Assembly (NCBI RefSeq): GCF_000002075.1
Contig: NW_004797711.1
Coordinates: 98,306 to 162,305, forward strand
Origin: Aplysia californica
Lineage: Eukaryota
Reading direction: 5' to 3'
Length of the DNA: 64,000 bases
Under the pieces are notes generated by a model, which was not told where the DNA came from, ran no database searches, and worked only from the letters and a program-made list of their open reading frames with translations. Positions 31,101 through 37,100 of this stretch are shown in pieces. Within the stretch, counting starts at the first letter, position 1. Each line of letters begins with the position of its first letter. The translations under genes and the position numbers were made by a program.

Positions 31101-34100
31101 TTAACTATCTGTGTCTCCCCATGTCCCCCCCTACCCCGCCATCCCCCAGTGGCCTACTACCTTCTGCTGAACCTGGCGGAGGACCTGAGCGTGGAGCTCA
31201 AGATGAGGAACAAGGGAATCGTGCGCATGTTGGTGAGCACGCTGGGCCGCGAGAACTTTGAGCTGCTCATCCTGGTCGTCTCCTTCCTCAAGAAGCTCAG
31301 CATCTTCATTGAGAACAAGAAGGAAATGGTGATTGTCGTAGCTCAAGATTGGTAGATACAGAGTACTGTATTTATTTGGTCGCTTTTGGGGACAAGCGGG
31401 CTAACCCAGATTCCGGGGTTTTCCAGAAATATTGACCTACTCCGAAAGTGGGCATTGCCCTACCTATAGGACAAGTTTGGTTTCATTGGTGTGTATATAT
31501 TTGTTTGGTTATAGAGAAAACTCTCCTTGTCTTTCAAAGAAACTGAACAAGGGTCCGGAAAACTTTACCTTCGATTTTTGTCAAAACAGCATTTTTCGGA
31601 ATAGCTCCCTTGTGCTTAAAAGCGACCATTTAGTCGGCACACATCGTAATGTGTGCTTGGTGTTGTGGGCAGGTGGACCTGAACATTGTAGAGAAGCTGA
31701 CCAAGCTGATCCCCTGCGACCACGAGGATCTGCTCAACATCACCATCCGGGCGGGGGGGGGGGGGGGGGGGTAATTTGCCATTTACAACAAAAAAAAAGA
31801 AGTTTCATTAAAATATCTAGATTTTAGATATATAGTGTTTTACATGATCGTCGTTCTTTGCAAGCTGGGGAGTGTGAAATAAGGAGCGGGGGTTGCGAAA
31901 AAAATCTGAAAAATAATAAACGGGGGGGGGGGGGCGCAATAAATCTGAAAATTGATAAGTGGGTGGAACGCTTTTTCGCTACCTCTGAGTACTGTACTTA
32001 TTTTTAGTCAGCACCCATCGTAATGTAAGCTTGGTGTCGTGGGCAGGTGGACCTGAACATTGTGGAGAAGCTGACCAAGCTGATCCCCTGCGACCACGAG
32101 GATCTGCTCAACATCACCATCCGGCTGCTGCTCAACCTCAGCTTCGACCCGGACATCCGCAGCAAGATTGTAAAGTTTGGACTTCTGCCCAAGCTGGTGG
32201 GACTGCTCAGTGAGTGATTTTCTTCTTCTTTGTTGCAGTCCTGTGGGTGGTTGGCGGGGGCTCGGGTGTGATTCTTCTTCTTCTTTTCTGTATGGACATC
32301 TGTCGTCTTTATCTCCCCTCCTTCTTTATTTGTGTTTGTTACTCTCTTGTTACATGTACCTTTAATTTTCAGCACTTATATGAACTTATTGTGTTGCAAG
32401 TACCGTAAAACCATTTACTCCCCCCGGGGCGGTGCCACTGACTGAAGTGTCTGTAGGCCATTCTCAAAGGGGAGACATTTCTCCTTCTTATACACAGCAG
32501 AATTGTAAATGGGCTGATTCAACAATGTCATGCTCATAACTGTGCCTGAACTACAACAGGGAACTGCTGCTTTTTCTTCTCTCATCCTTACTTTCTTCAT
32601 TTTTTCTCTACTTCTTTTGTATGTTTGTCACTCTCTTGTGACCGGCTATTTCTGGGGTGCCTTGATAGTCGAAGCAGACTTTGTACTGTTGAAGCTAAAG
32701 AGGTGAGCAGAGTAAGTCTGATTCCCTGTAAGGACTTCTCTGTGGACATCCAGCCCTTGGTGCTCATATGAACTTATGCAGTTGCGAGCGCTGTAAAACC
32801 TCTACTAAAACTAAAACATATCTCCCCTCCTTCTTTTTTGTGTTTGTTACTCTCTTGTAATATGGTTTGCCCACTACGGCTGAATCGGGCAGATCGCACA
32901 ACTCAATAGCGTGAAACGGAAAACAAACAAGTTTGTTTTTGAAGCAACCAAGTCTGGCTATCGGCCCGATCGGCCGATCCCATCCGTAGTGGGCACCCCG
33001 TTATAACACCTCTGATCTTCAGCACTTATATGACCTTTTTGTGTTGCAAATGGCGTCAAACACTTTACTAAAACTAAACTGTTTGTCTGTGTGTGTGCAC
33101 AGACAACGAGAACCACCAGCAGCTGGTGCTGTGTATCCTGTACCACATCAGCATGGAGGACAAGGCCAAGTCCATGTTCACCTACACCGACTGCATACCT
33201 ATGGTGAGTGGCTCCTTAACCCTATCTGTACTGTATACCTATGGTGAGTGGCTCCTTAACCCTATCTGTACTGTATACCTATGGTGAGTGGCTCCTTAAC
33301 CCTATCTGTACTGCATACCTATGGTGAGTGGCTCCTTAACCCTATCTGTACTGTATACCTATGGTGAGTGGCTCTTTAACCCTATCTGTACTGTATACCT
33401 ATGGTGAGTGGCTCTTTAACCCTATCTGTACTGTATACCTATGGTGAGTGGCTCTTTAACCCTATCTGTACTGTATACCTATGGTGAGTGGCTCTTTAAC
33501 CCTATCTGTACTGTATACCTATGGTGAGTGGCTCTTTAACCCTATCTGTACTGTATACCTATGGTGAGTGGCTCCTTAACCCTATCTGTACTGTATACCT
33601 ATGGTGAGTGGCTCTTTAACCCTATCTGTACTGTATACCTATGGTGAGTGGCTCTTTAACCCTATCTGTACTGTATACCTATGGTGAGTGGCTCTTTAAC
33701 CCTATCTGTACTGTATACCTATGGTGAGTGGCTCTTTAACCCTATCTGTACTGTATACCTATGGTGAGTGGCTCCTTAACCCTATCTGTACTGTATACCT
33801 ATGGTGAGTGGCTCCTTAACCCTATCTGTACTGTATACCTATGGTGAGTGGCTCCTTAACACATTACACCCTGAGGGCCTGGACGGGAAGTCCATTGTTA
33901 GATCCTAAGGGCCTGGACGGGAAGTCCATTGTTAGATCCTAAGGGCCTGGACGGGAAGTCCATTGGTAGATCCTAAGCAAGGGGAAAGAACCCACCTCCC
34001 GTGAATACAAGCCTTTAAAAAACACATTTTAAAAATACTAAACAAATTCCAAAAATCCTGAAAAAATAAAAGTCAAAAAGAAAGCTGAATGTAGTTTCAG

Positions 34101-37100
34101 AAAAATATAACTTTAAGTATGCACAAACTGTTGGAAATGTACTAACTTTAGTTCAATCGGGGTATCCGACCCGTCACTCTCACTCTCAGCCTCGCGGTCG
34201 GGCCCTAGATCTAAATTTTTTATTTTTTCCGTCTGATCAATCGGAATCGCCCCAAACTCTTCCTACAACATTTTCATCAAAATCTGAGCCATCTGATTTG
34301 TCACATGCTCGTTTTTGCTCAAATCCATCGTTATTTCCATTTTCGAACTCAATTGTGTCGCTTTTCAACAAGTCGAGACACTTTCGAAGTGTCGGTAACG
34401 CGATCGTATTTCGATCAGCTCTAATACTAAAACTATTGGCCAGAAAAGTTTCGTTTCAGTACCAAACGAAAGAAGAAACTTTTTGCTATACTATGCAAAT
34501 CAAAATCCCGGCCCCAGAGTCTCGTCAAGGCGAGACTTTCGTTTCTAAAGGGTGAGTCAGGGTGGAGCGCGTAAGGGAATTCGCGGGCGAGTTAGGGTGT
34601 AATGTGTTAACCCTATCCAGACTGTATACCCGTGGTGAGTGGTTCCTTAACTCTTTGAACCCCATCGGACGCTGAGAGCCTCCGGCGGTAATAATAATAA
34701 TAATAAATAGCATTTGTACAGCGCATACCCCGCTTAACGGCAAGCTCTATGCGCTTTACACTATATTATTACCCCAGCAGACCATAGAACACTCCGAAAC
34801 ATTCTCAGCTTCCCGGGAAGCATACAGTGCAAGCAGCTGATTAAGCGCTCAAACTCTAACAAACTGACAAGATCTTTCGCTGTCTAGAGCCGGGTACCCA
34901 TTCCCACCTGGGTGAAGTGAGAAAAATTTGTGTAAAGTACCTTTCCCAAAGACACAACGTCGGGCCCTTGACGGGATTCGAACCCACGACCTTACGATTG
35001 CGAGTTCGAGAGCCTAACCACAAGGCGACTGACGCCACTAATAACCCTGTTCCCCATCAGACGCTAGGGGCGTCCAGTACTAGTGACAACTGTTTCGTTT
35101 TATCTAGTACTAGTTTTTGCTTGTTTTTCAGAACTATTTCCGAAACAAATTTTTTTAGTAATGACTAAGCCTTTGTTCCCGCTATTTAGAAGTTGGAGGC
35201 AAGCTTTTGGGGTTATAATGAGACATAGTGCACCAGGTTTAGGTGACTGTCGAAAAAACTCAGGGAAACGGTGGGAAAAAAACTCAGGGCGTAAAGAGTT
35301 AACCCTATCTAGACTGTATACCCATGGTGAGTGGCTCCTTAACCCTATCTAGACTGTATACCCATGGTGAGTGGCTCCTTAACCCTATCCAGACTGTATA
35401 CCCATGGTGAGTGGCTCCTTAACCCTATCCAGACTGTATACCCATGGTGAATGGCTCCTTAACCCTTCCAGCCCAAGCCATTTCTGTACTCTCCCTAACC
35501 CCAGTCCCTGCCAATACAGCAGTATTTCAGAAAAGAGGCATGCATTCTAGAAAGTGATGTGGTATCTTTGTAATGAGGATTAGATAACAACATATAACAA
35601 AGTATATAGGTAAATGAACAAATATTCTGAAAATTGAAGTTTAATTAGGTTTGATAATTTCGAAAAACATGCAAATTCTGTGGCCCCTAAACTGAGAATA
35701 TACGCTCTTGGGATGGTGGGAGGTACAGGCACTGCTGAAAATATACGTGTTCGGGGCTGGAAGGGTTAACTATTTAAGGACACAGCGGACATATGTGTTG
35801 CGGCCAGGCGGAATCAAGCGCTCGTCAATTTTTGAGCATATGGAGTTATTGGTATCACTTGAAGTTTTATCCTTTTTGTCTAGCTTTTGGTGAAAAAAAA
35901 TACTCGTCTATCTTGAACAGAAGTTAAGATATTTGCAATTGCCTGGTTTCAGAGGTAAAATTAGTGGGAAAATGGCTTCCAAAGTTTAGTAACTTTCATA
36001 GCTTGAGAGTCCTTGGATACTGAGCATAAACATTTTTGTGCCTTAAATCCACGTTCTTCAGTAAAATCCACGCAGAAATGTGTTTTTAAATGGAGATAAA
36101 AGATGTTGAGCCAGTAAACAGAAATTTGAAAAAAATTGCCAGACCGGCGAAAAAATGTCGTTGTCTTCTATTTAATTATTTTGAGGAGCGCCTAATTTCA
36201 CCATGATGCCTCCCATATATATGTCTGATCAGCAGACGAAAGGCAATATTGCCGCACATTTTTTCCGTTATACACATCTGAAACTGGAATTTTCTTATTT
36301 CACAGCATGCATGTTGGTGCCTGCCTTTTTGGGGGGGTTTCAGATGGATTGAAATAAAATTAGTGAAAAAATCTGTACTCTGAATTTACGTTTATTTTTT
36401 AAAGTGGCTCAAAACAGCTCCTCGAATGACCAGAATGTGAGTCTTCAGTTGTGTAAAGGGGAAACAGGTAGGCTTTTTGCTGTTATTGTATTGTAGATAT
36501 TTATGATCAGTCAATTCCATATTGCTTGCAGACAATGGGAAGCGTAGTGGTTGCATAAACATCTTAGTAGTGCGTTTGATAACACTGACCTATTTGTGCT
36601 GTGTTTTCCAGGCAATGAAAATGCTGTTGGAGAGCCCGGAGGACCCTGACCTTGAACTCCTGGCCTTGTGCATCAACCTGGCGGCCAACAAACGCACGGC
36701 TCAGATCATCTGTGAGGGCCCCGGCCTGAAGATGCTGATGAAGAGAGCCTTCAAGTTCAAGGATCCGTTCCTGATGAAAATGATTCGCAATCTGTCCCAG
36801 CACCAGGGCCCCACCAAGAACTTGTTCATTGTGAGTGGTTTCCCTTGTTTAACTGTGTGCCCCCGCGGGGCGCCGATTGGCGGCGGTGTGATATAGCGTG
36901 TACCGCACCTGTATCCTGGTTCTTGGGGATAGGGGTTGCGCGCTGTGCATGCTTCGTGGGTGGATACTGTTAAAATACATTTTTTGTTTTGTAATGCAAG
37001 TGTTTTTACGCCCGCATCGTCACAATTTAGATGATTTGGGAGACGGGCTTCTTATCCTGCCTGTCATAGCCAACCGGGGCTGAGTGGGATACAAGTTTCA

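What the first reader, a model, noticed from the sequence alone, without database searches (positions are those of the whole stretch)
33191..35769. 22-copy splice-donor array that is also a TTAA landing pad for three different piggyBac-type MITEs
Seen: the last 13 nt of KIFAP3 exon 9 plus the donor ATG|GTGAGT are repeated every 40 bp (17 contiguous + 5 further copies). Every unit has one TTAA. Three unrelated TIR elements (33860-34606, 34651-35298, 35463-35765) each sit exactly at a unit's TTAA with TTAA duplicated, and the array resumes in register after the first two. All downstream donors are unproductive: +40 and +80 frameshift, and >=+120 includes TGA at 33285. Known: piggyBac-superfamily elements insert at TTAA. 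Inference: the gene tolerates 21 near-perfect decoy donors. The array could be a neutral transposon sink, or a copy-number-tunable dial sending KIFAP3 mRNA to NMD.
Basis: partly seen in the sequence, partly recalled or inferred. Interest (0 to 1): 0.82.

Follow-up and report, generated by a model that had tools for sequence, protein, structure and literature searches.

The report
Transposon-seeded splice-donor repeat in KIFAP3
In a sea-slug gene for a motor-protein adaptor, the end of one exon and the start of the next intron were copied 22 times in a row, a known and usually harmless kind of repeat, but here the repeat unit was built from the tip of a small jumping element and was later split by three more such elements.

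Summary
In detail: 22 copies of a 40-bp unit carry the KIFAP3 exon end and donor. Three TTAA-flanked MITEs of separate multi-copy families interrupt them. Only donor 33204 keeps KAP3 colinear.

This is a known kind: a donor-spanning minisatellite (amphioxus 'mirage'; human F7, CBS, IFI6, LMNB2). In F7 only the first donor is used and copy number does not change the choice; in CBS and IFI6 two pseudo-donors leak. A second such array lies in the same gene, and this scan noted the pattern elsewhere in this genome (s1-721685).

New here: each unit contains TTAA plus the 12-nt terminus of a fourth MITE family (8,660 ends genome-wide, control 1), joined to the exon by a 2-4 nt overlap. A MITE end probably seeded the array. 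All three MITEs sit in the six distal TTAAs and split the array into separately homogenised blocks.

Three insertions exceed TTAA count alone (14% of sites versus about 1% locally; post hoc), but there is no genome-wide homing to such termini. Donor use could not be measured, so the NMD dial is unsupported (about 5%).

The parts
33103..33203 (+). KIFAP3 coding exon ('exon 9'), ends in phase 0 at the authentic donor (GT at 33204)
   Evidence: PF05804 match; residues 1-32 align to KAP3 396-427 in PDB 9w9h_C
33190..33859 (+). Proximal block: 17 donor-bearing 40-bp units, mean pairwise difference 0.65 of 40 nt
33216..33231 (+). TTAA plus 12-nt terminus of a fourth TTAA-MITE family (MITE4), repeated in every unit; overlaps the copied exon segment by 2-4 nt
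   Evidence: 8,660 such ends in the genome, control 1; full copy at window 52499-52737
33860..34606 (.). MITE1, TTAA-flanked, perfect 13-nt TIR, family about 705 bp, here with one extra pair of 34-bp subterminal repeats
   Evidence: 527 candidates, best other copy 93%; TTAA at nearly all readable ends of 19 other copies; 3.6% from consensus
34607..34650 (+). Unit 18, isolated between MITE1 and MITE2, the most diverged unit (6.6 of 40 nt from the proximal block)
   Evidence: present without mismatch, with both MITE ends, in a contig of another sample (X5)
34651..35298 (.). MITE2 (family about 297 bp, TTAA-flanked), interrupted by a SINE
   Evidence: 817 candidates, best other copy 92%; ends; 5.8% from consensus
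34690..35032 (-). tRNA-derived SINE with A and B boxes and an AAT-repeat tail, nested in MITE2
   Evidence: dispersed copies 73-93% identical
35299..35462 (+). Distal block: 4 units (donors 35327, 35367, 35407, 35447), 1.2 of 40 nt apart within the block, 4.4 from the proximal block
   Evidence: collapsed depth 3-4 times unique in two samples
35463..35765 (.). MITE3, 303 bp, perfect 12-nt TIR, TTAA-flanked, at the last unit's TTAA
   Evidence: 741 candidates, best other copy 89%; junction bridged by contig 35421-35534 of run X1
36612..36830 (+). Next KIFAP3 exon, phase 0 acceptor
   Evidence: residues 2-73 align to KAP3 430-502; open only with donor 33204
38895..39066 (+). Second donor-spanning array in the same gene (42 bp x 4, in frame but with a TAA stop), followed by a SINE (39064-39402) and a degenerate unit near 39440-39467

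Best explanation
A neutral or nearly neutral donor-spanning minisatellite ('mirage') with a transposon origin. Step 1 (inferred, strong): a MITE4 element inserted at the TTAA 12 nt behind the donor. Step 2 (inferred): a template switch or end-joining event between the end of its 12-nt TIR and the matching 2-4 nt in the exon end duplicated 40 bp (14 nt exon, 12 nt intron, TTAA, TIR); the MITE4 body was excised or deleted. Step 3 (shown by structure): the unit expanded, and MITE1, MITE2 and MITE3 inserted at three of its TTAAs, a site already proven usable and now multiplied, in a MITE-rich region. Step 4 (shown by divergence): the insertions cut the array into blocks that homogenised separately; the 17-unit proximal block is young or still turning over and has no insertion. 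Splicing (inferred from frame and precedent): donor 33204 is used for nearly all productive mRNA; any leak is to the next one or two donors, is out of frame, would be cleared by NMD, and need not scale with copy number.
For: TIR identity: pattern has 8,660 genomic matches against 1 control, paired ends about 245 bp apart with TTAA. Proximal and distal unit variants each derive from the MITE4 TIR consensus by a CpG transition on opposite strands, plus one further change distally. MITE4 termini duplicated together with neighbouring DNA occur at other loci (C10, C77, C136, C728 with 13 or more copies, C1723). Block divergence 0.65, 1.2, 4.4 and 6.6 of 40 nt against MITE divergence of 3.6% and 5.8% from consensus. 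Colinearity with KAP3 only through donor 1. Second array in the same gene. Precedents with 5-26 donors (PMC1557585; PMC3087553).
Against: No RNA read shows which donor is used (run X24 had no read on the next exon). The MITE4 body is absent, so step 1 rests on 16 nt. Three insertions in 22 sites remain an outlier (P about 1e-3 at the local rate) that the neutral model explains only loosely. One low-depth contig of run X10 keeps the 3' part of this intron joined to the next exon while leaving the genome at that exon's donor.
Confidence: 0.75

Rival explanations
1. Copy-number-tunable dial: more decoy donors divert more KIFAP3 pre-mRNA to frameshifted or stop-containing isoforms and NMD, and array length is selected.
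For: All 21 downstream donors are unproductive. Two pseudo-donors are used in human CBS and IFI6 (PMC1557585). An intronic VNTR affects ABCA7 splicing (PMC5954066, title only). One intron-retaining contig in run X10.
Against: In F7, 1 to 12 copies gave the same donor choice; amphioxus mirages do not disturb splicing. Unproductive outcomes are the default for a 40-nt unit with a stop in it. The same architecture recurs at another exon of this gene and elsewhere in the genome, which points to mutation rather than design. No length polymorphism was shown.
Confidence: 0.05
2. Active landing pad: TIR remnants in each unit bind transposase and draw piggyBac-type elements to the adjacent TTAA.
For: 3 of 22 sites occupied against about 1% of other TTAAs in the window; two insertions abut a TIR remnant directly.
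Against: Genome-wide, ends of MITE1-3 type abut a MITE4 TIR at 2 places outside this locus, against 1.3-1.9 expected from random TTAA use. The 16 proximal sites carry the same remnant and are empty.
Confidence: 0.08
3. Chance: TTAA number times a high regional insertion rate, picked out afterwards from many windows; no special site quality.
For: TTAA MITEs cluster: 16 of 29 listed MITE4 ends on contig C3 fall in 0.29 of 4.13 Mb; the window holds three more such MITEs outside the array; hundreds of windows were read.
Against: Even at the local rate P(3 or more of 22) is about 1.3e-3, and 2e-5 for the six older sites. Insertion flanks are G-biased (31% against 16-19% at the first two outer positions, n=59 ends), and all three used sites have that flank while the nine sites with T before TTAA are empty.
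Confidence: 0.35
4. Assembly artefact, at least for the 17-unit block.
Against: Units carry position-specific variants. Distal junctions appear without mismatch in contigs of two samples, and depth over the distal block is 3-4 times unique depth.
Confidence: 0.07

Closest known systems
Amphioxus 'mirages' (Adh3, globins BflGb6 and BflGb9, TnC; PMC3087553, PMC3902484)
   Same: Tandem copies of an exon-intron boundary; units of 10-160 bp; concerted evolution within blocks with diverged boundary copies; no reported harm to splicing.
   Different: Here in a gastropod; the unit holds a MITE terminus, which offers an origin (the paper calls the origin unclear); three MITEs split the array.
Human F7 IVS7 37-bp VNTR and the IFI6, CBS, LMNB2 and PDGF donor minisatellites (PMC1557585)
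   Same: First unit spans the donor, so 4 to 25 identical pseudo-donors follow; similar unit size and copy number.
   Different: Donor choice and length polymorphism are measured there, not here; no transposon part was described in the passages read.
Repeated insertion at preserved target sites and TE-derived tandem arrays (McGurk and Barbash, 10.1101/158386)
   Same: An insertion preserves and duplicates its target, good targets are reused, and TEs gather at array edges.
   Different: There whole elements form dimers; here only a 12-nt end plus host exon and intron DNA was amplified, and different families inserted later.
Non-autonomous piggyBac-type MITEs
   Same: TTAA duplication, short TIRs beginning with pyrimidines (CAC, CTC, CCC), no coding capacity, hundreds to thousands of copies.
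   Different: No autonomous partner was linked to these TIRs, so the superfamily is assigned from ends only.

Membership tests
Donor-spanning minisatellite (mirage / F7-type) | Tandem unit that includes the exon end and the 5' splice site, first copy being the real junction | tested here: met
Donor-spanning minisatellite (mirage / F7-type) | Concerted evolution within blocks, diverged outer copies | tested here: met
   0.65, 1.2, 4.4 and 6.6 differences per 40 nt
Donor-spanning minisatellite (mirage / F7-type) | Most upstream donor used in mRNA | tested here: inconclusive
   Only donor 1 keeps frame and colinearity; no junction reads obtained
Donor-spanning minisatellite (mirage / F7-type) | Length polymorphism between alleles | not testable with these tools
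   Only short-read contigs were available, and the reads tool turns away long repeats
piggyBac-type MITE (MITE1-4) | TTAA target-site duplication across dispersed copies | tested here: met
piggyBac-type MITE (MITE1-4) | Short TIRs with pyrimidine-starting termini (own knowledge: CCC, CAC, CTC types) | tested here: met
piggyBac-type MITE (MITE1-4) | Autonomous partner with the same TIR encoding a piggyBac transposase | not tested
Kolobok (the other TTAA superfamily) | 5'-RR ... YY-3' termini | tested here: not met
   Definition from PMC9587614; all four MITEs begin CA, CT or CC
Regulated unproductive splicing (poison splice to NMD) | Measurable, regulated use of the unproductive site | tested here: inconclusive
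   No read on the next exon in the only raw RNA run
Regulated unproductive splicing (poison splice to NMD) | Conservation of the unproductive site across species | not testable with these tools
   No related genome offered; the array unit was found only at this locus

The most novel reading that the evidence does not exclude
A transposon end created a self-amplifying host-transposon hybrid unit at a splice donor; the amplified TTAA is a true insertion hotspot, and the length-variable array lowers KIFAP3 output through leaky downstream donors or slowed removal of this intron. In the wider form, breaks at MITE ends next to exons would be a general source of mirage arrays.
Probability: 0.08. Interest if true: 0.65.

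Novelty: new variant of a known kind. Interest (0 to 1): 0.33.

Why it matters
The way mirage arrays start is described as unclear. This locus gives a readable origin (MITE end plus short overlap with the exon end), and the later MITE insertions act as time marks that show how a donor array homogenises block by block, with the exon-proximal side youngest. It is also a natural invertebrate test of the 'first donor wins' rule known from mammals. It does not, on present evidence, reveal a new regulatory system.

Tried and rejected
1. Homing of MITEs to the TIR remnant: 2 junctions seen elsewhere, 1.3-1.9 expected; rejected.
2. Genome-wide enrichment of donor arrays by triple-motif patterns: 1,850 against 1,237 control matches and 2,210 against 520; both are dominated by simple repeats and one satellite family, so they show that such arrays are many but not that they are enriched at real exons.
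3. MITE3 as source of the unit's post-TTAA sequence: MITE4 fits better (12 of 12 nt for family variants).
4. MITE2 as two separate elements: family copies carry the same left end, so it is one element plus a SINE.
5. tRNA gene or Rfam RNA in the region: none.
6. Donor use from RNA reads: no coverage; the tool drops human-like reads silently, so the blank is not a finding.
7. Coordinate slips (frame start, acceptor) were corrected.
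Full report
Setting. The window is G000:C441:98306-162305 of a 927,310,431-base assembly in 4,332 pieces. From memory this size matches the Aplysia californica reference; an earlier scan note also names Aplysia; I did not test the species. Pfam PF05804 (KAP) matches only this contig, exon by exon, so KIFAP3 is single copy. 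The exon at 33103-33203 aligns to mammalian KAP3 396-427 and the next exon (36612-36830) to 430-502. With one residue on each side of the phase 0 junction, donor 33204 gives an exactly colinear protein.

Observation. There are 22 donor-bearing 40-bp units: 17 contiguous, one at 34635 and four at 35327-35447, each with one TTAA. Nineteen decoys equal the real donor. Donors +40 and +80 shift the frame (stops at 36647 and 36616), and all later donors include TGA 33285. Three elements sit at unit TTAAs with TTAA on both sides. Each belongs to a dispersed family: 527, 817 and 741 candidates, with best other copies at 93%, 92% and 89% identity. The second element is a 297-bp MITE with a 343-bp tRNA-derived SINE nested in it. 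The three interiors do not match each other, but their TIRs fit one degenerate pattern with 1,830 genomic matches against 36 control. Their termini begin with pyrimidines, which fits piggyBac (own knowledge) and not Kolobok (PMC9587614). No autonomous partner was tested.

Is it real DNA? A contig of the probable assembly sample bridges unit 22 and MITE3 without mismatch. A contig of another sample and study holds 24 nt of the MITE1 end, all of unit 18 and 25 nt of the MITE2 start without mismatch, which is under the tool's 31-letter bridging rule but hard to get by chance. Depth over the distal block is 3-4 times unique depth in both. No joint skipping a whole MITE was among the rows shown. 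The 17-unit block was left out of the read call, so its copy number is unverified. A 99.9% identical duplication of three exons just upstream warns that this scaffold has local assembly problems.

What the unit is made of. After TTAA each unit carries 12 nt that are the terminus of a fourth MITE family. That terminus occurs 8,660 times in the genome against 1 control match, in TTAA-flanked elements of about 245 bp, one of them at window 52499-52737. The proximal and distal unit variants each differ from the TIR consensus by a CpG transition on opposite strands, with one more change distally. The last two TIR bases, and four in some family members, equal the first bases of the copied exon segment. 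The simplest history is a MITE4 insertion 12 nt into the intron, a switch from the TIR end back to the exon end that duplicated 40 bp, and loss of the MITE body. This is inference; the body is gone. The process recurs: short tandem repeats made of the MITE4 end plus neighbouring DNA occur on C10, C77, C136, C728 and C1723. The KIFAP3 unit itself is found only here. The first-stage reader noted the terminus in a separate entry (s1-727235); I found it independently before reading that note.

Order of events. Units differ by 0.65 of 40 nt within the proximal block, 1.2 within the distal block, 4.4 between them, and unit 18 differs by 6.6 from the proximal block. MITE1 and MITE2 are 3.6% and 5.8% from their family consensus (the consensus comes from the top hits only). 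So the MITEs are old enough to have cut the array into blocks that then homogenised apart. All three lie in the six distal TTAAs; the 16 proximal ones are empty. The array was therefore probably not a 22-site target when they arrived, or turnover removed proximal insertions. Unit 4 carries the exon's C variant, a hint that the exon end still exchanges sequence with the array.

Is it a landing pad? Three of 22 sites (14%) are occupied. Elsewhere in the window three such MITEs share about 296 TTAAs (about 1%). P(3 or more) is 1.3e-3 at that rate and 4e-5 at 0.3%, chosen after the fact. So TTAA count alone is a poor fit, but the excess has ordinary sources. These MITEs cluster regionally (16 of 29 listed MITE4 ends on C3 lie in 7% of the contig). 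Insertion flanks lean to G (31% against 16-19%), as at the three used sites. A target already used once was multiplied, which is the logic described for repeated insertions by McGurk and Barbash. Homing to the TIR remnant is not supported: 2 such junctions outside this locus against 1.3-1.9 expected, assuming 4.0-4.9 million TTAAs.

Splicing. The one raw RNA run had no read on the next exon, so donor use was not measured; the tool may also drop conserved reads. One contig of run X10 (depth 5) runs from inside the intron through the next exon and leaves the genome at that exon's donor. It fits partly spliced pre-mRNA and is too thin to show retention. Precedent is clear. In human F7 only the first of 5-9 identical donors is used, and 1 to 12 copies do not change that. 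IFI6 (25 pseudo-sites) and CBS (15-20 repeats) leak to two pseudo-sites; LMNB2 and PDGF use only the real one (PMC1557585). Amphioxus mirages do not disturb splicing (PMC3087553, PMC3902484). A second donor array, also broken by a mobile element with an older copy beyond it, sits three exons on in the same gene (38895-39066). An earlier follow-up in this scan reported the pattern at ten introns of two other genes (s1-721685; I checked the papers, not those genes).

Verdict. It is a member of a known class, with a copy number inside the known range. The variant aspects are the MITE terminus inside the unit and the MITE-dated block structure. The regulatory dial has no support here and is contradicted by the closest experiment. 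Interest 0.33.

Noticed in passing
window 28552-30282 versus 30283-32387: Three KIFAP3 exons are duplicated (1,467 bp at 99.9%), with a truncated exon copy ending in a G run at 31750 before a third, complete copy; likely a haplotype mis-join, possibly a very recent duplication.
   Followed up: partly
window 38895-39467: Second donor-spanning array (42 bp x 4) in KIFAP3, followed by a SINE of the same family as the one in MITE2 and then a degenerate unit.
   Followed up: partly
window 35299-35446: Distal units place a pyrimidine run and AG directly before the 14-nt exon copy and its donor, so each could in principle be a 14-nt frameshifting microexon; no evidence of use.
   Followed up: no
window 37117-37518 and 43888-44093: Two intronic tandem arrays (66 bp x 6, 40 bp x 5) built from the same dispersed repeat segment.
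   Followed up: no
G000:C728:40625-41027, C1723:42687-42878, C10:1060920, C77:9614, C136:738818: Other tandem repeats seeded by the MITE4 terminus plus neighbouring DNA; C728 has 13 or more copies with 21- and 52-bp units.
   Followed up: partly
L001:1317-1518, L013:1120-1518, L023:1293-1585: MITE4 copies whose terminal 65-67 bp are duplicated in tandem; may be a subfamily trait rather than independent events.
   Followed up: no
L032:1150-2524: A MITE1 copy nested at a TTAA inside another TTAA-flanked TIR element.
   Followed up: no
window 35788-36225: An older, very abundant repeat with inverted ends follows MITE3; at least six more copies in the window at about 72% identity.
   Followed up: partly
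window 19232-21933 (minus strand): ORF pieces resembling an N-terminal protein methyltransferase (NTMT1-like, from memory), head to head with KIFAP3.
   Followed up: no
window 57929-58823: 53-bp x 17 tandem array, open in several frames; probably non-coding.
   Followed up: no
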